A stretch of DNA of 64,000 nt from Trichoplax adhaerens (GCF_000150275.1 NW_002060949.1:1547836-1611835); one strand, 5' to 3'; counted from the stretch's first letter, positions 19,301-30,619 are shown. Notes: generated from the letters alone by a model not told the origin. Program-made: numbers and translations.

Positions 19301-22300
19301 ATAATATCGCCCTACCCTAAATATTCTATGACAATTTAGCTAGTAAAAAATGCCGACCAATTTATCACAGGGTAGTACGTATTGGTTTACTTATTATGTA
19401 TTCTTAATTATATGCATTCTATGTAGGATTTCAACGTGGAATATCTCCGGCATTAGACCTGCATTTTCTTGCTAAGGAAGGTGATAAACTGGCTAAGAAA
19501 ATTAATTTTTTAAATCCTAGCCAAGAAGATGCTCCTCTTCTGTGGTTTATAACGACCCTTTGCAAAACTTCTGCAATGGTATAAAAAATTACTTGATACA
19601 GTATTTGTGTTGTCTGAGCTAGAAATACTTAACCTTCAAATAGTAATTAAAAAATTTTTCTCATATTTATGGTAATTGCACATTCTTGTAAATTTTCAGG
19701 ATTTAGTTGCCAGTACTGACGTTGCTGATGCGTTAGTAGGTACTAGCCTGGGACAAAACCCTGGTTTATCATTTCATCAAGTAAGGGCTGCACCTGTCTA
19801 CACATTATTACATTTATGTGTATACCAATAGCATCATTTACCTTTGGACCTGCAATTTAAAAATTTTTTAATCTTGTATCTATTCAGAAGTACTATTAAC
19901 AAAGCTATAGCGAATAAGTTTAACAATTATATATTTTAATTTAGATCCAAAGGGCAATCAGGGAAACTATTGATATGATTAAAGCTCAAACCCAATTTAG
20001 CATGTATTGCTACAATTTATTAGATAGAGCTTCCCGGCTACGGAAGGAAATCAAAGACAGCATTATGGTAAACGAGACTTAAACATACAATTATGAGAGA
20101 AACGTCACGTAGGACGAATAGACTATAATGGCAATACTTTCAAGTTATATGATAATTTAGCCACCATTAAGGAACGAAAAATCAATAATAGTTTTAGCCT
20201 TTACGTGTGGCTATTAAATTTCACACACTCATAAAGATTTGATCTATTTATAATTTTAACTTAATGTATAGGAAATAGCGGAATATTCACCACGAACTGC
20301 AGATAAATCTCATAGCCTTTTAAACAAGTATGATACTGGATATGGGCGCATTTTTGCATGTAACATTCACCATCAAGCAACTTTAAGCAGCAATTAACAA
20401 TTAGAACATTTCCCTATGTCACAGTGTACTTCTATGCCGACTTTGACTTATATTAACTTTTCTGATAATTGTATTACTCATCTACCAGCAGAATTCTTTC
20501 AGACATTTACTCAACTTCTGTCCTTGAACTTGAACGGAAATTTACTCTCTTGTTTACCTAAAGGGATTAGTAAATTGAAAAAATTAAAATATTTGAATTT
20601 ATCCAACAATAAATTGACCGATTTGCCCGACGATTTCAAAGATTGCAGTCGAAATTTGCAGGAGTTAAATCTTGCCAGCAATTACTTAACATCTTTACCT
20701 AATTATATTGGCAGCTTTATAAGCCTATTGGAGCTTGATCTTAGCTATAATCTCATTTCATCTTTACCCACCTCTCTATGCCGATTAACATCGTTAATAA
20801 CCTTAAATTTAGCAGGTCATCAACTCAAAGTACTACCATCGGGCTTAGATCAGTTATCATTATTGAAAAATTTAAATTTAAGTGGCATGCCAGTCATGGA
20901 GATTACTGAAGCATCGGTTTTACATCGAAATAACATGAGGGTTACATTAACCAAAGGTCAACCGAATCGACCTGTTAACGGATATGATAACGATGTAAGT
21001 AAATACAATATTCAAACGAATCTAATATAAAATTTTGGGTACCGTTACAATACAAGATATCATACAAGTATCGCTCGTATATGGTATCTCAAGGAGTATT
21101 AACCATTATTAACTTATTAACAGGATTATATAGATCTCTTTCAAGCTTGTGATGAAGATGGCAATCATGTTCTGGATTATCTAGAGTTAAATAAGCTGAA
21201 TAACCTGCTATTTACTAAAATTGTCCGTTTGAACGAAATGTTTGATGAGAATAATGACAATCAGCAAAATGCATGGCCAATATTGGGACTTAAGAATCTG
21301 GAGAATTTAACGCTAGATTACTTGCCTATAAGATCAATCCCTGAAGATTTTGGAAACTGTTTAACCAATTTGAAAACATTAAGTTTACGCCATTGCTTAC
21401 TATTGGAATCGTTACCAGCATCATTAGGGGGATTGCATCTAACAAAGCTAGAAATTGTTGGTACAGAAAAAATGAGAACTCCGCCACCTGAAATCACAGC
21501 TAGAGGATTAAATTCAGTGATGGCCTACTTAAAGCGCTTATCATATGGATCATCAGAATGTAAGCGTACCAAACTTATGATGGTAGGACTTGGAGGAGCT
21601 GGCAAAACTAGGTATAAAGGCGTATACATCTTATATAGTTTTATAGTAATCTTAACTGAATTTATAACATCTACTATGGCCGCGAAATTACGTTACTGAT
21701 ACTGTATATTTGTTCTATTCTTGCTATCATTTGTCCGGTGTATATATATACTTGTCTAATGTCTATCTTAATTCATTAATATTATTACATAAATACCTGA
21801 TAAATTTATGCCAGTAATTAGTTCTTGCCTCTTAAGGCAGTTATTAGTATAGTGTAAAATATGACAGAAATTTACCAATGACATTTTTTAATTAAAATTT
21901 TTTCCAGTCTGTCTCGGTCGTTAAGATCAGCTTCCTTTAGTGATAAAACAACTGGTGAAGAAGCCATTACTGATGGAATTGATATTGCCATTTGGACTGT
22001 TGAAACACCTGATAAACAAAAAATTGAATATAGTTTATGGGATTTCGCAGGACAGACATTATATTATAATACACATCAGGTTAGAATAGAATTAATTTGA
22101 AATAGCTTATCTTTATTAACTAATTAATATACAGTATTCTCTGATAACAGACATACTATACGTTGCAATGATAAAACTTAATGATAATATCTTAATATTA
22201 TTTATTATCCATATATAGTTTTTCTTATCCAATCGTGCAGTGTACCTGCTGGTTTGGAATACACGTCTTGGCTACGAGCATGCTGGTTTGGAATTTTGGC

Positions 22301-25300
22301 TTAGCTCTATATCTTGTCATGCCCCAGAAGCTCCGATTTTTGTTGTTGGTACACATTGTGATAAAGTAAGTACGGAAGAAAATGAAAACTAAAATAGACC
22401 AGAAGTTAAACTATCAAAATTTTATTAGTATTAATTGTAAAGTAAGCTTTAGTTCTGAACAATTAACAAGGTTGAAAAAAGTGAAATACCAAAAGGTCGC
22501 CTCCAAAAGTTTTATCCGCAGATCCAAGGCTTTTTTACAGTTAGCTCAGCAACTGGCCAAGTTAGTATTATAGATTAGCAGTGCCCTAATGAATTCATTA
22601 TAGGAACAAAATCTTTGACTTTTACTAAATCGCATTCTTTAGACCTTCCTAAAAACTTTGTCATAGAGCGATACCACGATAGAGTCAATTAGTAAACTGG
22701 AAGGCATAAATAGTCTCTAATTACATAATTAAATTTCTAGTTTATCTTCGTCGTAAACGATATCATTTTTCAATTTACGGAGCAAGTTTTGCATCATCTG
22801 GTCTTGTAAGTCCAATTATTTTGATACCTTTAGGGCATCCAAAAACTTTATGGCGATTTAATCGCTGTTACGTTGAAGCAAAAGTACATGGGTGAAAAAA
22901 TTCCAAACATTTGGTTGGAGTATGAGAACTCTATTATAAGGTGAAATAGTTTGGAAGTCCTGTAAATTAAATTCATTATGAGATGTAAATATAGAAATTA
23001 CTTAAAATAATTTTCCAGTAAGAGGTTTACTATCAGGCTTAATCTTTGATATTTGCCTATTCTAGATAAGCTTTAGATGGTACATGACTTTACATTTATA
23101 AAAATGAAAATATTAATATATTAAATCGTTAAATAAATTAATAGCTGCCGTAATAGGAGTAGTGTCCTATCGTGGAAGGAGATAACAGAAATTGCTTGCA
23201 ACCATGGAATTTTCCAAGATGATGAAGTAATTTCTATATGATAATTAATTGGATTCTCATGTATGTGTTTGAAACTGAAATTTATAGAGATAGTAAAACA
23301 ACAAATCTCCTTCTCGGTTGCCCTCTTTAGCATCTTAAGTAGTTCAGTGACATCCCATTTTAATTACCGTAAAGCAAGTGTAGAAACAGCTTTGCAGTAT
23401 TGCTTATACATGAACCAACGCCAATTTGATTAGGTATACAAATAAATAGCATACGCATTATGAAAATAAACCTCATGTTTAATCATAGGAGAGAGCATGT
23501 GAAAACACGAGCAGTTTAATGGAGTCCGTTGTGTAACTCGGAATGCTAACAATTGCTCATCATCAACTACAGTAATCGCATATTTCCATTGCATTAACTA
23601 TATAGACATAAAATTAGACTAAAATATGCGCAGATAATATTAGAAAAATTACCATTACCTAAATGCGATCGATACTAATCAACTACTTCTATACGTTATT
23701 AACTATCACTTCTTAATTAAAATTATTACGATATGTTATTAGATTCGCGAAGCTGTCAAGTTACTAACAGATCTTGGATCAATCCAACATTTCGATACGG
23801 AAATGTTAAGAGAGGTAGTTGTAATCAATCCTCAGTGGATTGTAGATGTTATGGCTTGCGTTGTATCGGTCCACGATAGCCCTATAAAGGTAATTATGTA
23901 AGGGAAATCAACCATTACCTTTTAAAATATTTAACTTACAGTTATACCTATCGGCAACTTCTATCTAACAGTGAATGTTGTAACTGAATTCATGTTTGCA
24001 TTGCTTCTTATTAATGGTAAAAGACCGACTTCATATAATTCATTATTTTATAGAATGGTCGATTTCATCATAGTGACATGCAAAAGATTTGGTCAAAATA
24101 TAATTCCAACTTACATAAATGGTTATTGGGCCTGACTGAACAATTCGATCTAAGCTTCTCACTACCTAATAAAAGCACTAATTTAGTTCCATGCTTGTTA
24201 AACGATGATGACGAAGAAGTAAGTATTTTATTTTTCAATACAAGTGCTTGAAAGTTTTAAAAATCGGATGCAAATTATAAGATTGAATCCAAACTTGTTT
24301 TATTTCACGTTCTTCAAATTTTACTTCGTTATTAGACTGATGATTTAGATAAAGAAACCTTAGAAATGGACGGTATGAAGGAAACTAAAATGGTTTATAC
24401 TTTTCAGTATCTGCCAGCAGGTTTATTTAATCGACTGCAGGTATGACCATGTTATAACGTTACTTTTCACATCCAGCTATAGTTAAAAGGATTTAGAATT
24501 TTGATGAACGAATCATAACATTAGGTCATAATGCAAATTTTGTTACTTTGTAAATGTTAGGTTCGGCTATGTGAATTTACTGAAGACCAAACTATTAGCA
24601 AGCGAGGATCCAAATTAAAGAAGAATGGAAATTTTGCCGTCTTAAAACAATCAGAGTTAGTGATATAGCTAAAATTTCTTGTTTGACCTTTTTAGATATT
24701 AGATTAAACCTTTCATGGCTGTCATGTGAGAAATTAATTTTTTATATAGTCTTTTGAAACTCATATGGTCTCAAATAGCTAAAATTTCCCATTTAATTCT
24801 TTCTAGACTTGAAATTAAGAGTTTTTTAGTTCTATTTAAATGTATTGATTTATTTATAAGTACTTAGCCTCAAGGTAAAACTTGCATTATCAAGATTTAT
24901 CAGAATTTCACGTTTAATCTTCTCTAGAAGCAGAGTTAAAAGTTTTGCTTACTTGAAAGCAATAGATTTATTTATATACAGTTCATTTAAGATAGTAAAT
25001 ATAATGTAAAAGAAAACAATCTATCAATTTACTGACATCTCCCAATCTATATGACTAACATTACTACCTTATCGATAATATCATGAATACCGAAATTAGG
25101 GCATTAAAATACGAGTATTGATTACAGTCGCACTCGGCTAACAGCCAGATTTACTGGAATTATTTAAGATTTCTTAGTAAATAAGAGTTTGATAATTAGC
25201 ATTTAATTATATCTGGAACATTCATACGCCTATAATCACAAATTGCCTTCCTTGCGACAACTGAAATTATATGTCCAAAATTAGAATTTCATTTTAATTT

Positions 25301-28300
25301 ATTTGCACACTTATCAGTTTGAAATTCACTCATAATCAGCTGTTTACGAGTTAATGACGAATTACCATGCGTTTGCTTACCTTCTTGTGTCATAAGAGAT
25401 TACTCACCTTTAATAACTGGAATTATTGATCAGAGAATGATTTAAGATTATAAAGTATACTTACTGATCTATTTATTTCATATAATGGCAATAGAAATAA
25501 CTTAATAGACCTTAACGTCAATGGTTTACGACCTGAAAATATGCTGTATCTAGTCAATGAGGTTTTGGAATCGTTAACTGCAGACGCTTTTCATGGCGTT
25601 CATTTTTACTATTTGGTACCTTGCCCTCACTGTTTACAAAATGTAAAGTTAACAAGTTTTATTTACTTTAGAGCTAGATTATAATTGAGTTTTGAAATGT
25701 TAAATGCTAATATGAGATCATGTTTTTGCATGATGGCGTAGGGATCTCGCGATCCATCCATGTTTTCTTCTAAGCGAATACGTAGGGCAAGAGAAGTCAA
25801 GGCGATATTTCTGCAATGCGATGCCAATTTCCATACAGTTTCCATTTCAGAGTTAGAAAGTATGGCATTATTTCTACTTAAAACTATGTTATAACTTAAT
25901 CTTGTGATCCTGATTACACAAATTTTGCAAGATGGAGATGCTTGAATGCATACTAAGATTATAAATACAATATATATACTATATTTGATACCAAAATCAA
26001 GGAATCTTACCACCAACATCCAGTGATGAATTCGACGTTCACTTACAAAATGCAATGCAAGGCTTGGATGCTTTAAGCGATAGTATTATGACAGACGTAT
26101 ACGTAAGTTACTGCGAAGATGATTTACCTGCAGAAGAAAATTCTAATGAAACATTACATGTCAAGAGACTGATGAAATCACTAGAGGGTGAAGGCTATAA
26201 ATGGTAAACAGAATAGCGATTTTAATAATACTCTCCAGTAAAATGAAATATTAAGAGTTTCTACATAGAAAACAGATGTTGGCTAATGTCATTTAATATT
26301 TAAAATTAATTTATGATTAAGCTATTCTCTAAGAATACGTTGCTTTTTATTGCTCCTGTGAACAAAGTGTTTCTAATAAAAATCTTACCTTTATTAACTC
26401 ATGAGTTGTTAAAAATTATATCAATGTAGACGATGGAGATATGTAAAAATTGATATTGATATAAATTTTGATTTAATAGCGATGCTAGAGATTATCGAGA
26501 AAACTATAGCCTAGAAAATATAGCTGTTGGAATGAAACAGTCACGAGTAAGTTCGTAGTCTATCCCTAGATAGCTTCTAGGTTACAACTTTCATGAAATA
26601 ATTTCGAATGCATCTAACCCACTTACGCTATTTTAATGAGAGTCTAAATCAAAATATGTTTGATGTTGAAGAAATAATATCTATTTTAGGTCGATAATAG
26701 CTACTTTAATGTTAATAATAGTGCGCAAATTTTAGCCAAATATCCATGTGAATGTTTCTTTATTTAAACTGAAAATTCGAGGAGATAATAATCAATCAAT
26801 CTGATTTCTAATCATTGCTCAATTTAGGCTATTATAATTATGTTGTCTGATAATTATGAACGTAATGAACAGTGCCGATCTGAATTCTCTCATGCTTATG
26901 AACTGTTAAAAAAACCAATCATTTTAGCGGTTATTGGTAAAACTAATAATTGGACAAAAACAAATCTTGGCTTTCTTGTATCTAGTATGGTAAGAAGTGA
27001 ATATCATAAGCCTAAAACTGTTTTCTTTGTTCATACATAGGCATTCTTTAAAAATTTTATATGTTATTTCACATAATGCTGTTACTAATATGATATATTT
27101 TATCTACCAGTTATATATAGATTTTTCCAATATGCAATTATACAATGAGAAACTAGATGAAATTATTGATCAAGTAGAAAAAAAGACCCATAAGAAAGTG
27201 GTAAGCATATAATCATTAGTTAATTTAAATAAACATATTAAATGGAAGGCTTTCATCACGAGTAATAACACCTACTAATTGGGTTTCATTATTGATTTTA
27301 TACGTGAATATATATTATTGATTTCTTTCCTTTAGCAACATTTGCAGCAGACGGATTGCTTTATTAGTTACTGCTGGAAAAATTCAGCCAATGCTTGCGA
27401 ATTAGGAATTCAGCAGGTGGATGGTGCAATTGGAAAAGGTTTGTGAACTATCCGGCTAATATAATGTAAATCTATATTGAACTCACACTTTCAACTAATA
27501 AATTGAACGCGTCTAAGTTTTCAAAGTCTTTTGTAGCCGATATAGACGGGATTAACTTTAAATTATGTGTCTTGAACTGCTAATAGCTAAATTGTTTATA
27601 TGAATTAATATAATTAATCTAATTTGCACATTTACTATAATTCTCATAATGGCAGTTGATCCTAGAGACTTGAAGGATCAACTGAAAGCAAAGGGAATAA
27701 CTTGTTGGATGGACATAGAACAGCTAGGAAAGGTATTAGCACATCCATTACTCAGAAGAAATAAGTTTTTATAAAAACTTGCAGATGATTCATTATGAAT
27801 TTTCTATACTTTTTTTAAAAGATTAAATACTTGAAAGTTATCGTAATTGACTTGATCTACTTATATGCAAACTAACCAACGTTTAAATATTTGTGGTATT
27901 GGTATAACTTTCTTCAGGCGGGTTTATTTGAAGAAATTTCCATTGGTCTACGGAAATCAAAATTGTTTGTAGCTTGTGTTTCCGATGAGGTAAAGCTAGC
28001 TTTGACATAATAGTTTATGTATGTTATATTATCGGTTGCAGATGGTTTTATAACATAATATTAATTTACTAGAACTTCTCTAATAACTTTGCTTTATAAC
28101 AATAATTTGCTCTATTAGATTAGGTATCATTTATTAAATTTCTTCGTTCGCTTTTAATAGTACGTGAAATCCAATAATTGCATAATGGAATTTCGGTTTG
28201 CTGTGACTACATTACGACTACCAACCGTTTTAGCCATTATAGGAACAGGCATCAAATGGCAGTATTCAGAAGTACGAATAGGATGAGATTACTTTAATTT

Positions 28301-30619
28301 TTTATTATAAGTTTATGTAAGGGTTTCAATTAAAAAACTTTAAAGTATAGCTAGCTGAAGAATAATTTTATTGTCGACGGGTATTTTATAGGTTGGAATG
28401 TTGGCAGCTAATTTGCCCATGGTAAGTGCCATATTCTTTTACAGTAATTAATTAAGTTAAATTAAATAAATGAATAAAAAATAATTATTAAATCCTTAAA
28501 ATCTTTTTATATATACTTGTACAGTTCAATTTGCAAGGAAATGATTCAGAAATGTCGTCCGAAAAACTTCTATCATTCATAGTGGAGAAAATTTCTACTT
28601 TAATCAAGCCCGAAGACAATCTATTGACAACAGCCCCTAATATTGGAAAGGAAAGGAAATTACAGGACCGATCAGCCCAATTTCAGGTAAATTTAATGGA
28701 TAGTAAATAACTGCAGTGAAAGTTACATTGTTACGTAAAATCATTATTACTGCTGATAAAATTTGCGACATGATACTACGAGACACAGTATATCGACATC
28801 TGATATGCTGACACTGCTAGATACAGAAATAATTTTGAATTTTATCGCTATAAGAATATCAAGTGGTTGATTCTTAATATTATAATGTTTAAGAGATTAA
28901 TCTGGCATGATTTAGATTATTGTATCAAATTCATAACTTACGCTAAGTGATATTGTTTTATTTATAAAATCTTGATTAAGTAATTGCTTTCTCTACGATT
29001 TAATTACATATTATCGATGCAATATTCACTTATATTTTGTAAGGTAAAATGATATCATTGAGAAATATTGCGGTGAATTTAAGAAATTTTTATTCTTATA
29101 GGAAATGCTTGAATTAGCACAGCGAAATTTAATTCGCCAAGTCAGCAGTGTAGCTAATAGAATATCGACATCGTACCCTCGGCTATTCCTCATCGATTGG
29201 GAAGATAAACATGACGTAATATACGTATATTGCGGATAACTTATTTGACTGAATTTTCATTTAACTATGATATTAAAATACGGTTAACAAGCATTTTAAA
29301 TCGCATTAAATTCGAGATGTGTTGTTACTATTTAGTAATTGATACTAAAAATTGTGTATTAAACAATCAATAGATTTACAAACTGCTTTCAACTATCGTC
29401 TGTGTCAGTCTGATAGTCATAATTAATGAAGTAAAATTAAAATTTACTCCATCATGAATACTATCAATATCGAAATAGGAATCTTTGCAACTGATCCAAT
29501 TTTATCAACTTAGGGATCAGCAAATTTGGAATCCTCTAGAGAGTATTACATAAAAGTATTATGTGAGCATGAAGAGGTAAATTGCGTTACAGATATTATT
29601 ATGATGTCTTATGTCGCATTTAGTGCAGATAACTGGATGATTTTCTAATAGACAAAAATATTAATAGATTAAAAGGCAAGCGTAAAATGAGTAAAGGTTA
29701 CGCATAGAATTGCTATATATTATTCATACGATTAATTGGATAATTTTTATTTCAGGGTTGGCATTGTCCAGAAAGTGGAGGCACATTTCCCATCCCAGGT
29801 GGTTCATCACAAATGAAATTGTTGGTAAAAAATACAGCAAAACATTTACTTCGAGTTATGTCTATCATGAAGCACAACAATACAGGATTTAATTCACTTA
29901 ATCAATCGAATGAAGATGAATTTTTTGATTATGTAGCATCGGTATGTTACAGAGTTTATATTATAAATGTTATAAATTCCAACTTTCAACAAAATTAATT
30001 TATAATCAAATGATTAACCAATTATCCCTCCCTCCTTTACTAGGCTGCTAAATCAAGTGATCTTAATATCGGACTTAATTTTACATCTTTCATATCATTT
30101 ATGGATGAATTAAAAATTGAAAATATCGGATTATCAAGGTTAGTAGATAGATTCACTAACTATAGCTCGCTAACCATAAAAATTTTAAGTACGTATAACT
30201 GGTGTTGACTTCTGTCTTTAACTGTTCTTTTCTTGTTTCTATGCAAATAACTAGTATGTGTGCTTTATATCCAGTTTGTGCACTGCTCCACTGTGATCAT
30301 CTTCAATCATACTAAAGCTATTAATTGTAGTAATCAATTTCAATTTTGTTGTTCTATCAAATATAGGACTCATCTTCCGAATGGTAAAGTGTTATGGTTA
30401 TGCGACAAGCATAAAGCTGCTAAACATTTTACTTTAGATCATCTAGGTAGTGACTCATCGAATCAACAAGCCAAGCAGATTAATCATGTCGCTGATGTTC
30501 AACAACCAAGTGTTACATTGGCAAAGCCAAGGACTAAATTTGCAGCAGCTGCAGTTACTGTAGCGGCATCCCAGGGATTATCCAAGAGTTCAAAGTCTAG
30601 CGTTTGCTCTGTTATGTAA
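7386..30619 (+). CDS. Giant multidomain kinase-less ROCO protein (two Roc-COR modules, SPRY, SH3, MBT, Tudor x2, LRR/EF-hand, TIR x2, CaaX); about 54 exons, about 2,900 aa
   Basis: Manual exon chain with GT-AG introns and compatible phases: 7386-7490, 7819-8282, 8412-8577, 8955-9056, 9258-9418, 9794-9923, 10059-10298, 10618-10737, 11055-11183, 11723-12094, 12799-12958, 13287-13305, 13410-13485, 13680-14081, 14233-14367, 14504-14596, 15253-15378, 15469-15715, 15844-15977, 17639-17915, 18030-18112, 18240-18303, 19043-19234, 19427-19578, 19700-19780, 19945-20067, 20272-20994, 21124-21611, 21908-22079, 22219-22365, 22471-22560, 22834-22940, 23145-23226, 23743-23889, 24054-24218, 24336-24440, 24561-24655, 25495-25642, 25742-25859, 26002-26203, 26480-26546, 26828-26989, 27111-27200, 27336-27438, 27656-27732, 27918-27989, 28161-28271, 28392-28421, 28525-28686, 29102-29215, 29514-29576, 29756-29941, 30044-30138, 30367-30619. 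Sum is 8727 nt, divisible by 3. The first exon is the least certain. Confidence 0.85.
7819..8282 (+). other. N-terminal Cys-containing (FBXL/AMN1-type) leucine-rich repeats of the ROCO gene
   Basis: NCPKIATLICDGCNNLTD / YCQDLTTISFNYCPKLTH repeats of about 26 aa, ending LKGNPI just before the Roc-like domain. Confidence 0.75.
8412..12958 (+). other. First (degenerate) Roc-COR module
   Basis: P-loop RINVIGNRGVGKST (8425-8451); G3 position reads ITECTSQ; G4 ILVGTHAE; G5 YAVSN; COR-like marks LKHLHLQGKL, VIFNKSWL, WKEGVLL, VACPNC. Confidence 0.7.
13680..14367 (+). other. SPRY-like domain
   Basis: KFEFSV...FYFGLV...LPPGFTDKSIGFSLIDNKLF...KLSCCLD...VSFVVD...YYPMI follows the SPRY pattern YFEV..IGL..LPGW..SxGY..IGCGxD..FFxxNG..LYPxV. 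Confidence 0.7.
14564..15378 (+). other. SH3-like domain (two exons)
   Basis: GVVIKDYSKL|NTNYIASSIGEIVHILEKTNNDHYKAKNLSEQSGLIPIDCIK. Confidence 0.65.
15469..15715 (+). other. MBT-like repeat
   Basis: LQKGDWIEFFD...IDSPNIHPLGWALSTKYEVTSP matches the MBT signature DSPxIHPVGWC. Confidence 0.65.
15844..17915 (+). other. Tandem Tudor/Agenet (chromo-barrel-like) domains
   Basis: YYKGQRVEIKYSSSWYKGTVL...KIHYDGWQDSYDETI and KVGDKVEAKWHSTWYKATIL...FVRYDGYSSSWDTWF. Confidence 0.75.
20416..21540 (+). other. Typical 23-aa LRR array with an inserted EF-hand
   Basis: LxxLxxLNLSxNxLxxLP repeats; EF loop DEDGNHVLDYLE at 21151-21186; ends TPPPEITARGLNSVMAYLKRL, the usual ROCO LRR-to-Roc hinge. Confidence 0.9.
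21565..25859 (+). other. Second (canonical) Roc GTPase and COR domain
   Basis: [107 protein letters not shown]. Confidence 0.93.
24665..24985. repeat. Degenerate intronic tandem repeat, about 110-120-bp period
   Basis: ATAGCTAAAATTTC... recurs near 24665 and 24775, with a diverged third copy near 24900. Confidence 0.5.
26090..28421 (+). other. Two tandem TIR (TIR_2-like) domains
   Basis: TIR1: DVYVSYC...IAVGMKQSRAIIIMLSDNYERNEQCRSEF...PIILAVIG. TIR2: DCFISYCW...GITCWMDIE...EEISIGLRKSKLFVACVSDEYVKSNNCIMEF. Confidence 0.85.

What the first reader, a model, noticed from the sequence alone, without database searches (positions are those of the whole stretch)
26090..28421. Both TIR domains keep the NADase catalytic glutamate
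Seen: TIR1 has SDNYERNEQCRSEF (Glu codon 26882-26884) and TIR2 has SDEYVKSNNCIMEF (Glu codon 28188-28190), each with an (F/Y)(I/V)SY first strand. Known: the SxxYxxSxWCxxEL Glu is the catalytic residue of enzymatic TIRs (SARM1 E642, plant TIR-NLRs, bacterial Thoeris ThsB). Inference: Roc-COR dimerisation could cluster four TIRs and switch on NAD+ cleavage or cyclic ADPR-type signal synthesis, occupying the slot held by the kinase in LRRK2. The Glu is necessary but not sufficient for activity.
Basis: partly seen in the sequence, partly recalled or inferred. Interest (0 to 1): 0.82.

Follow-up and report, generated by a model that had tools for sequence, protein, structure and literature searches.

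The report
Tandem TIR domains of Trichoplax ROCO
These are real exons of an already annotated giant Trichoplax signalling gene whose two TIR domains both carry the "enzyme" glutamate, a fact already tabulated in a 2026 preprint; only the second domain looks like a conserved NAD+-cleaving module, and no activity has yet been shown.

Summary
The Glu codons GAA 26882-26884 and 28188-28190 sit in ten short GT-AG exons. These exons match residues 2276-2616 of TRIADDRAFT_57945 (UniProt B3S268, Trichoplax adhaerens, 2814 aa) exactly. The protein reads MBT/chromo-like, LRR, Roc, COR-A, COR-B, TIR1, TIR2, unnamed C-terminal domain, CaaX.

It is not new. The family is ecTIR-DC 14. Hurieva et al. (bioRxiv 2026) already list both B3S268 TIRs as having Glu at the catalytic position. 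The scan also reached the same verdict on this gene's paralogue, on other DNA of the same genome.

What I add is an asymmetry between the two domains.
- **TIR2:** Glu is kept in 89/89 homologues. So are the strand-A Ser, an Asp and a Ser that align with the mutationally validated Cat1 NADase residues D33, S68 and E74.
- **TIR1:** Glu is kept in only 3/89 (Leu/Ile/Met elsewhere). In Trichoplax it also lacks the second Ser, the AA-loop motif and the BB-loop Gly/Phe.

Two orthologous TIR2 domains gave no cADPR isomers in that preprint's E. coli screen, but known active plant TIRs also failed there.

Best reading: TIR2 is the likely catalytic unit and TIR1 a diverged partner. The GTPase-driven four-TIR switch remains inference. 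Interest is modest.

The parts
26004..26203 (+). TIR1 exon 1 (aa 2259-2324 plus 2 nt of Cys2325): linker after COR-B, strand A D-V-Y-V-S-Y-C, helix A. Box-1 Ser S2293 is codon 26106-26108.
26480..26546 (+). TIR1 exon 2 (aa 2325-2347): diverged BB-loop region, one to two residues shorter than in TIR2, without the Trp, Gly and Phe conserved in TIR2.
26828..26989 (+). TIR1 exon 3 (aa 2348-2401): strand C, helix C, strand D. Glu E2366 is GAA 26882-26884. N2360 (26864-26866) replaces the Ser that is invariant in TIR2.
27111..27200 (+). TIR1 exon 4 (aa 2402-2431): strand E, helix E and the linker to TIR2.
27336..27438 (+). TIR2 exon 1 (aa 2432-2465 plus 1 nt): strand A C-F-I-S-Y-C-W-K-N-S. Box-1 Ser S2442 is codon 27366-27368. 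Includes the W-x-N-S AA-loop motif conserved in the family (W 86/89, N and S 89/89).
27656..27732 (+). TIR2 exon 2 (aa 2466-2491): invariant D-P-R, strand B, C-W-M-D-I-E-Q. D2485 (27712-27714) aligns with Cat1 D33.
27918..27989 (+). TIR2 exon 3 (aa 2492-2515): BB loop G-L-F, helix B, strand C ending in S-D-E. The catalytic motif is split by the next intron.
28161..28271 (+). TIR2 exon 4 (aa 2516-2552): Y-V-K-S-N-N-C-I-M-E-F, helix C, strand D. S2519 is 28170-28172. Glu E2525 is GAA 28188-28190, invariant in 89/89.
28392..28421 (+). TIR2 exon 5 (aa 2553-2562), a 10-codon micro-exon.
28525..28686 (+). TIR2 exon 6 (aa 2563-2616): strand E, helix E and linker. Its upstream intron lies at the same position and phase as the intron before TIR1 exon 4.
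21903..25864 (+). Roc (aa 1786-1904), COR-A (1959-2096) and COR-B (2117-2257) exons immediately upstream of the TIR pair.
29514..30619 (+). Exons for the conserved C-terminal domain without a Pfam name (aa 2617-2814), ending in C-S-V-M and the stop codon.

Best explanation
The region encodes the TIR1-TIR2 cassette of TRIADDRAFT_57945 (B3S268). This is a cytosolic ROCO protein of the metazoan ecTIR-DC 14 family. The cassette is ancient and has a fixed order. TIR2 is the conserved, Glu-dependent unit and most probably an NAD+-processing enzyme that needs assembly to work. TIR1 is a fast-evolving partner TIR that serves in TIR-TIR packing rather than catalysis. Placozoans happen to retain Glu at the TIR1 position, probably as an ancestral state. 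Shown: gene model, domain order, residue conservation, and alignment to validated NADase residues. Inferred: that Roc-COR nucleotide state or ligand binding to the LRR/MBT parts drives self-association, that TIR1 and TIR2 form an asymmetric pair which opens the TIR2 site, and that a nucleotide product or NAD+ loss is the output.
For: All ten exons equal P0108 aa 2276-2616, and its accessions are XP_002113972.1 and B3S268. Pfam domain order is MBT, LRR, Roc, COR-A, COR-B, then TIR_2 twice. An HMM built from TIR1 and one built from TIR2 find the order TIR1 then TIR2 in 107 proteins, including a choanoflagellate, a coral and acoels. In 89 aligned homologues TIR2 keeps E2525, S2442, Y2443, D2485, S2513, Y2516 and S2519 in 89/89. 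It has 45 of 125 columns at 80% or more one residue and 52% mean identity to Trichoplax. TIR1 has 11 of 133 such columns, 27% identity, and Glu in 3/89. The family profile hits the Cat1 NADase (9mud) at E 1.4e-8. That alignment pairs D2485, S2519 and E2525 with Cat1 D33, S68 and E74, whose alanine mutants lose function (PMC12162218). The TIR1 part of the profile instead hits TLR and MyD88 TIRs, with Leu opposite their Glu. An AlphaFold2 model of the oyster homologue P0009 (pLDDT 84) shows two complete TIR folds with the Glu inside helix C. TIR2 aligns to the SARM1 TIR at Z 15.3, rmsd 2.4 A over 126 residues, 21% identity. The missing Trp four residues before Glu is not disqualifying: active fish TIRs in Hurieva Table S4 (rows 145, 146) have S-R-N/S-C-K-K-E-L.
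Against: No activity has been shown for this protein. Two orthologous TIR2 domains are left blank in the 'Active' column of Hurieva et al. Table S4. They are Dimorphilus A0A7I8VYT1, whose cluster representative is B3S268_2, and Rotaria A0A818LFL5. A conserved Glu also occurs in TLR TIRs that show no activity. The fold search matches scaffold TIRs (Hydra TRR-2, MyD88) as well as it matches enzymes. I could not model the Trichoplax domains themselves. I also had no coordinates to check pocket geometry or TIR1-TIR2 packing.
Confidence: 0.5

Rival explanations
1. Both TIRs are non-enzymatic adaptor domains. The ROCO protein is a cytosolic sensor that recruits other TIR proteins, such as the placozoan MyD88-like CARD-TIR proteins, by homotypic TIR assembly. 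The conserved Glu serves structure or binding.
For: The TIR1 profile resembles TLR and MyD88 TIRs. The top structural matches include Hydra TRR-2 and MyD88. Two orthologous TIR2 domains were inactive in E. coli. Kamm et al. 2019 and Gerdol et al. 2017 proposed adaptor or regulator roles for ecTIR-DC proteins.
Against: Glu, two Ser and an Asp are invariant in 89/89 TIR2 domains and align with validated Cat1 active-site residues. A pure scaffold does not explain this. The same screen missed the known enzymes RUN1, RPS4 and RPP1.
Confidence: 0.3
2. One reading: in Trichoplax both TIR1 and TIR2 are active NADases, so a Roc-COR dimer brings together four catalytic TIRs.
For: Both domains have the Glu and the strand-A Ser. 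Both Trichoplax paralogues keep the TIR1 Glu, although their TIR1 core exons are only about 36% identical. Hurieva Table S3 scores B3S268_1 and B3S268_2 both as GLU by structural alignment.
Against: In Trichoplax TIR1, Asn replaces the Ser equivalent to Cat1 S68. The W-x-N-S AA-loop motif and the D-P-R motif are absent. The BB loop is shortened and lacks the Gly and Phe. Across the family the position is Leu, Ile or Met in 77 of 89, so the TIR1 pocket is not under catalytic constraint.
Confidence: 0.15

Closest known systems
ecTIR-DC 14 ROCO-TIR proteins of invertebrates (Gerdol et al. 2017; placozoan members noted by Kamm et al. 2019, PMC6321704; Aplysia ROCO-TIR-MBT, PMC9334734; actiniarian 'NG1', PMC5094078)
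   Same: This is a member. It is a large cytosolic protein of about 3000 aa with MBT, LRR, Roc, COR and TIR_2. PMC5094078 explicitly mentions the Trichoplax TIR_2 + GTPase + MBT architecture. Orthologues were retrieved from amphioxus, hemichordate, molluscs, annelids, nemerteans, brachiopods and rotifers.
   Different: Nothing in the architecture differs. The one peculiarity is that the placozoan proteins keep Glu in TIR1, where bilaterian members have Leu, Ile or Met.
Cat1 (CRISPR-associated TIR NADase; PDB 9mud; PMC12162218)
   Same: It is the best sequence-profile match to TIR2 (E 1.4e-8). Cat1 active-site residues D33, S68 and E74 align with the invariant D2485, S2519 and E2525. Its active site forms only between two TIRs on assembly.
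   Different: Cat1 is a prokaryotic CARF-TIR activated by cA4 that forms filaments. It has Trp four residues before the Glu, where TIR2 has Asn. It has no tandem TIR and no GTPase.
SARM1 TIR domain
   Same: It is an animal NADase TIR. The oyster TIR2 model superposes on it at Z 15.3, rmsd 2.4 A, 21% identity. The strand-A Ser (S567 in SARM1) and the Glu (E642) are present, and the BB loop is of the similar x-D-x-E-x-L...G-x-F type (my reading of the SARM1 sequence in Hurieva Table S4).
   Different: This protein has no ARM or SAM domains, so it is not a SARM1 orthologue. The SARM1-specific insertion before the Glu and W638 are absent. Activity is unproven.
LRRK2 / LRRK1 / MFHAS1 (animal ROCO proteins)
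   Same: It shares the LRR-Roc-COR-A-COR-B core. The effector module sits directly after COR-B, followed by a further C-terminal domain.
   Different: No kinase domain was found (no Pkinase hit), although UniProt's automatic name is 'non-specific serine/threonine protein kinase'. A TIR pair takes the kinase's place.
Plant TIR-NLR resistosomes (RPP1, ROQ1) and the RRS1/RPS4 pair
   Same: This is an analogy only. An NTPase-controlled assembly brings four TIRs together as two asymmetric pairs, and only one TIR of each pair is catalytic. RRS1/RPS4 pairs an inactive TIR with an active one.
   Different: The switch here is a Roc GTPase rather than a STAND ATPase, and the two TIR types are fused in one chain. 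No assembly data exist.

Membership tests
TIR domain (Pfam PF13676 TIR_2 / PF01582 TIR) | Profile match above the curated cut-off | tested here: met
   For P0108, TIR_2 scores 77.8 bits against a cut-off of 28, in two stretches. TIR scores 33.1 bits against 21.3. Single exons reach only E 0.008-0.04.
TIR domain (Pfam PF13676 TIR_2 / PF01582 TIR) | Flavodoxin-like five-strand, five-helix fold | tested here: inconclusive
   Tested only on a 36%-identical oyster homologue, P0009. It shows two complete TIR folds at pLDDT 84, with Z 13-16.5 to many solved TIRs. The Trichoplax piece itself could not be handed to the predictor.
Catalytic (NAD+-cleaving) TIR domains | Glu in helix C at the catalytic position | tested here: met
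   E2366 (TIR1) and E2525 (TIR2) by motif and profile alignment. Hurieva Table S3 lists both B3S268 TIRs as GLU by structural alignment.
Catalytic (NAD+-cleaving) TIR domains | Strand-A Ser next to the Glu (SARM1 S567; bioRxiv 10.1101/2025.04.09.647920) | tested here: met
   S2293 and S2442 are present. In the family it is 89/89 in TIR2 and 38/89 in TIR1.
Catalytic (NAD+-cleaving) TIR domains | Remaining pocket residues (equivalents of Cat1 D33, S68 and N10; BB-loop Gly) | tested here: inconclusive
   Met in TIR2: D2485, S2519 and N2447 are invariant in 89/89, and the BB-loop Gly G2493 is kept in 76/89. Not met in TIR1: N2360 replaces the Ser, the AA-loop motif is missing and the BB loop has no Gly.
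Catalytic (NAD+-cleaving) TIR domains | Glu-dependent NAD+ turnover or cADPR-type product | not testable with these tools
   The only available data concern two orthologous TIR2 domains that were negative in an E. coli screen. That screen also missed RUN1, RPS4 and RPP1.
ROCO proteins | Roc GTPase directly followed by COR | tested here: met
   Roc 1786-1904 (E 7e-26), COR-A 1959-2096 (E 6e-36), COR-B 2117-2257 (E 4e-38).
LRRK-type ROCO kinases | Protein kinase domain after COR | tested here: not met
   No kinase family appears among the Pfam hits at E 0.01. TIR1 begins at about residue 2288.
SARM1 orthologues | ARM-SAM-SAM-TIR architecture | tested here: not met
   There are no ARM or SAM hits, and the architecture is ROCO.

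The most novel reading that the evidence does not exclude
The TIR1-TIR2 cassette is an obligate intramolecular heterotypic TIR pair. It would be a single-chain equivalent of the asymmetric TIR dimer of plant TIR-NLR resistosomes. TIR1 has become a non-catalytic activator that opens the TIR2 site, and a Roc GTPase rather than a STAND ATPase controls assembly. Placozoans would preserve the ancestral state in which both halves still carry the Glu, so they could show how an enzyme/pseudo-enzyme pair arose.
Probability: 0.25. Interest if true: 0.7.

Novelty: already known. Interest (0 to 1): 0.35.

Why it matters
If TIR2 is an enzyme, this family would be a GTPase-gated nucleotide-signal or NAD+-depletion switch. 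It is found across many invertebrate phyla and its cassette reaches back to choanoflagellates. That would extend the emerging view that enzymatic TIR signalling is ancestral in animals. As a finding, however, it adds little. The gene, its architecture and the Glu in both TIRs are on record, and the obvious first experiment has been run on two orthologues with a negative, though weak, result. The useful new points are three. The two TIRs are not equivalent. TIR2 is the one to assay. Trichoplax is one of the few species where TIR1 still has the Glu.

Tried and rejected
- **Exon-wise searches.** Pfam on single exons gave only marginal TIR_2 hits. A PDB sequence search with the TIR1 core exon found nothing. 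A six-frame TIR_2 scan of the genome did not list this locus at all. Small exons hide the domain.
- **A separate BB-loop exon.** I first looked for an extra TIR1 exon around 26405-26443. I rejected it because no acceptor keeps the frame. Direct splicing from 26203 to 26480 gives Cys2325 and matches the database protein.
- **The C-terminal domain.** The ESM Atlas search gave no usable match. A first call failed because the protein was too long.
- **Fold search as a discriminator.** Scaffold and enzyme TIRs score alike, so it cannot separate enzyme from scaffold.
- **Absence of Trp before the Glu.** I considered it evidence against activity. I rejected that because active fish and rotifer TIRs in Hurieva Table S4 also lack it.
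- **The ROCO-type active protein in Hurieva Fig. 3.** The figure legend lists Roc, COR and LRR among the domain abbreviations for its architecture panel. The stored tables do not say which protein that is.
- I gave no joined spliced model to any tool. Exons were searched one by one by reference. For whole-protein work I used the database entry P0108 that a search returned. Pieces of P0108 were cut only inside scripts for local BLAST, HMM and MAFFT work. The Trichoplax TIR pair itself was not folded: the protein exceeds the predictor's length limit and the piece has no reference.

Full report
**What the window is.** The window is G000:C1408:1547836-1611835 of a 105.6 Mb, 1414-contig genome. It has about 31% G+C, few long ORFs and many short GT-AG exons. 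A database protein returned by a search fixes the source. P0108 is TRIADDRAFT_57945 (XP_002113972.1, UniProt B3S268) of Trichoplax adhaerens, and it lies on a 5,881,857-base contig, the length of C1408. It matches the window from 7386 to 30616 on the + strand. The contig is not human.

**Check of the observation.**
- The TIR1 motif is contiguous at 26846-26887.
- The TIR2 motif is split by a 171-base intron. S-D-E ends at 27989 and Y-V-K-S-N-N-C-I-M-E-F begins at 28161.
- The strand-A motifs are at 26094-26114 and 27357-27374.
- I derived a ten-exon model from frames, splice sites and phases. Every exon is found exactly and contiguously in P0108, at residues 2276-2616.
- The Glu residues are therefore E2366 and E2525.

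**Handling of the spliced model.** I handed no joined model to any tool. Exons were searched singly by reference. For whole-protein questions I used the database entry P0108.

**Domain context.** Pfam on P0108 gives the following.
- MBT and chromo-like hits at about 1035-1220.
- LRRs at about 1494-1750.
- Roc at 1786-1904, COR-A at 1959-2096 and COR-B at 2117-2257.
- TIR_2 in two stretches (E 1.2e-21) plus TIR.
- No kinase.

After TIR2 comes a 200-residue region with no Pfam match that is conserved across the family. It ends in C-S-V-M.

**What is already known.**
- Kamm et al. 2019 (PMC6321704) describe two placozoan LRR+TIR proteins of about 3000 aa, classed as ecTIR-DC 14 after Gerdol et al. 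2017.
- van der Burg et al. 2016 (PMC5094078) mention the Trichoplax TIR_2 + GTPase + MBT architecture.
- ROCO-TIR-MBT proteins are reported in Aplysia.
- Hurieva et al. (bioRxiv 10.64898/2026.04.20.719644) assigned the catalytic-position residue of about 16,000 eukaryotic TIRs by structural alignment. Their Table S3 lists B3S268_1 as GLU and B3S268_2 as GLU. That is exactly this observation.
- Their Table S4 tested two orthologous TIR2-type domains. Row 137 is Dimorphilus A0A7I8VYT1, my P0040, whose cluster representative is B3S268_2. Row 136 is Rotaria A0A818LFL5, whose representative is Capitella R7TDS1_2, my P0123. Both have a blank 'Active' column.
- That negative result is weak. The domains were expressed alone and only three cADPR isomers were measured. 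The known enzymes RUN1, RPS4 and RPP1 are also blank in the same table.

**What I add: the two TIRs are not equivalent.** A full HMMER search with the TIR1 core exon found 85 proteins, most with two matched stretches. A word search with the amphioxus orthologue's TIR region added 68 large ROCO proteins from many invertebrate phyla. Ninety-odd proteins could be aligned over the whole TIR pair.

| Measure (89 aligned homologues) | TIR1 | TIR2 |
|---|---|---|
| Glu at the catalytic position | 3/89 | 89/89 (E2525) |
| Strand-A Ser | 38/89 | 89/89 (S2442) |
| Columns with one residue in at least 80% | 11 of 133 | 45 of 125 |
| Mean identity to Trichoplax | 27% | 52% |

- TIR2 also keeps Y2443, N2447, S2448, D2485, S2513, Y2516 and S2519 in 89/89.
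- The three proteins with Glu in TIR1 are P0108, its Trichoplax sp. H2 counterpart P0157, and one ROCO protein of unknown species from a EukProt transcriptome, P0036.
- Elsewhere the TIR1 position is Leu (43), Ile (21) or Met (13).
- HMMs built separately from each domain find the order TIR1-type then TIR2-type in 107 proteins.
- These include short Tudor-TIR-TIR proteins of a coral, acoels and the choanoflagellate Salpingoeca infusionum. There TIR1 has Glu or Gln.
- A quick midpoint-rooted FastTree of TIR1 puts Trichoplax with these Glu/Gln forms, outside the large bilaterian ROCO clade, which lacks Glu and is almost entirely hydrophobic at this position. This suggests Glu is ancestral and was lost once. 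I did not test support or rooting.
- The Trichoplax paralogue, at about 4.25 Mb on the same contig, also has Glu in both TIRs. Its TIR1 core exon is only about 36% identical to this one.

**Does either domain look catalytic?**
- A profile of 42 family members searched against PDB sequences hits the Cat1 NADase with its TIR2 part (9mud, E 1.4e-8). It hits TLR1/2/10/15 and MyD88 TIRs with its TIR1 part (E 7e-5 to 2e-3).
- Counting along the printed alignment, Cat1 D33, S68 and E74 pair with D2485, S2519 and E2525.
- The Cat1 paper names these among the residues lining the NADase site. Their alanine mutants lose function (PMC12162218).
- Aligning Trichoplax TIR1 to the TIR2 model shows what it keeps and lacks. 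It keeps the strand-A Ser, the Asp (D2326) and the Glu. It has Asn (N2360) for the Ser. It lacks the W-x-N-S AA-loop and D-P-R motifs. Its BB loop is shorter and has no Gly or Phe.
- The strand-A Ser matters because it hydrogen-bonds the catalytic Glu in SARM1 and SNC1 (bioRxiv 10.1101/2025.04.09.647920).
- Trp four residues before the Glu (W638 in SARM1, W70 in Cat1) is absent from both domains: Gln in TIR1, Asn in TIR2. Active TIRs in Hurieva Table S4 with S-R-N-C-K-K-E-L (coelacanth, NAD+ depletion) and S-R-S-C-K-K-E-L (herring, cADPR) show it is dispensable.

**Structure.**
- The Trichoplax protein is too long for the predictor and the TIR piece has no reference. I therefore modelled the 608-aa pearl-oyster homologue P0009, which is TIR1-TIR2-C-terminal domain and 36% identical, with a 42-sequence alignment.
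- The model has mean pLDDT 83.9 and pTM 0.61.
- Both domains have the full strand and helix order of a TIR. The nearly invariant Glu (E273 there) lies inside helix C (268-280), just after strand C (255-260).
- The VIA-align second look gives Z 13-16.5 for both domains against enzymes (SARM1 at Z 15.3, rmsd 2.4 A, 126 residues, 21% identity; RUN1; SPARTA; AbTir). It gives the same range against scaffolds (Hydra TRR-2, MyD88, IL-1RAcP).
- The fold therefore confirms TIR identity but does not decide enzyme versus scaffold. I had no coordinates to measure pocket geometry or TIR1-TIR2 contacts.

**Verdict.**
TIR2 is a strong candidate for a Glu-dependent, assembly-activated NAD+-processing domain (about 0.5). 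TIR1 is more likely a diverged partner than a second enzyme (about 0.15 that it is active).
- A purely adaptor role for both remains a serious rival (about 0.3).
- The Roc-COR-driven four-TIR switch is a reasonable analogy with plant TIR-NLR tetramers, but no evidence bears on it.

Noticed in passing
window 29514-30619 (+); P0108 aa 2617-2814; P0009 aa 384-597: A domain after TIR2 is conserved across the whole ROCO-TIR-TIR family (local BLAST E 1e-22 to 1e-10). It has no Pfam match. In the oyster model it is a confident alpha/beta fold (pLDDT above 90). The ESM Atlas gave no usable neighbour. It could be an effector, a ligand sensor or a membrane-proximal module.
   Followed up: partly
window 30605-30619 (+): The protein ends in C-S-V-M followed by a stop, a CaaX-like end, as another first-stage note says. 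I only confirmed the letters.
   Followed up: partly
G000:C1408:4248000-4257999 (L003), about 2.64 Mb downstream of the window: A paralogous LRR-Roc-COR-TIR-TIR gene lies here. TIR2 exons are 52-65% identical to this gene and the TIR1 core exon about 36%. Glu is present in both TIRs. TIR1 has Thr for the strand-C Ser and I-S-T for the strand-A motif.
   Followed up: partly
P0010 (Salpingoeca infusionum, 800 aa), P0004/P0090 (Stylophora), P0016/P0019 (acoels): The fixed-order TIR1-TIR2 cassette also occurs after a Tudor domain in short proteins, including one from a choanoflagellate. The cassette therefore predates animals and was later joined to ROCO.
   Followed up: partly
window 26989/27111 and 28421/28525: The introns before the last exon of TIR1 and of TIR2 lie at equivalent positions and are both phase 0. 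This fits an origin of the pair by tandem duplication. The other intron positions differ.
   Followed up: no
P0108 (2814 aa) versus P0157 (Trichoplax sp. H2, 2928 aa): The sister-strain model is 114 residues longer but 99.7% identical over the TIR pair. The T. adhaerens model may miss or shorten exons further upstream. UniProt's automatic name 'non-specific serine/threonine protein kinase' is misleading, since no kinase domain is found.
   Followed up: no
whole genome G000: A six-frame TIR_2 scan of the genome lists 17 places but not this locus, because each TIR is cut into four to six small exons. Exon-wise scans therefore undercount TIR genes in this genome.
   Followed up: no
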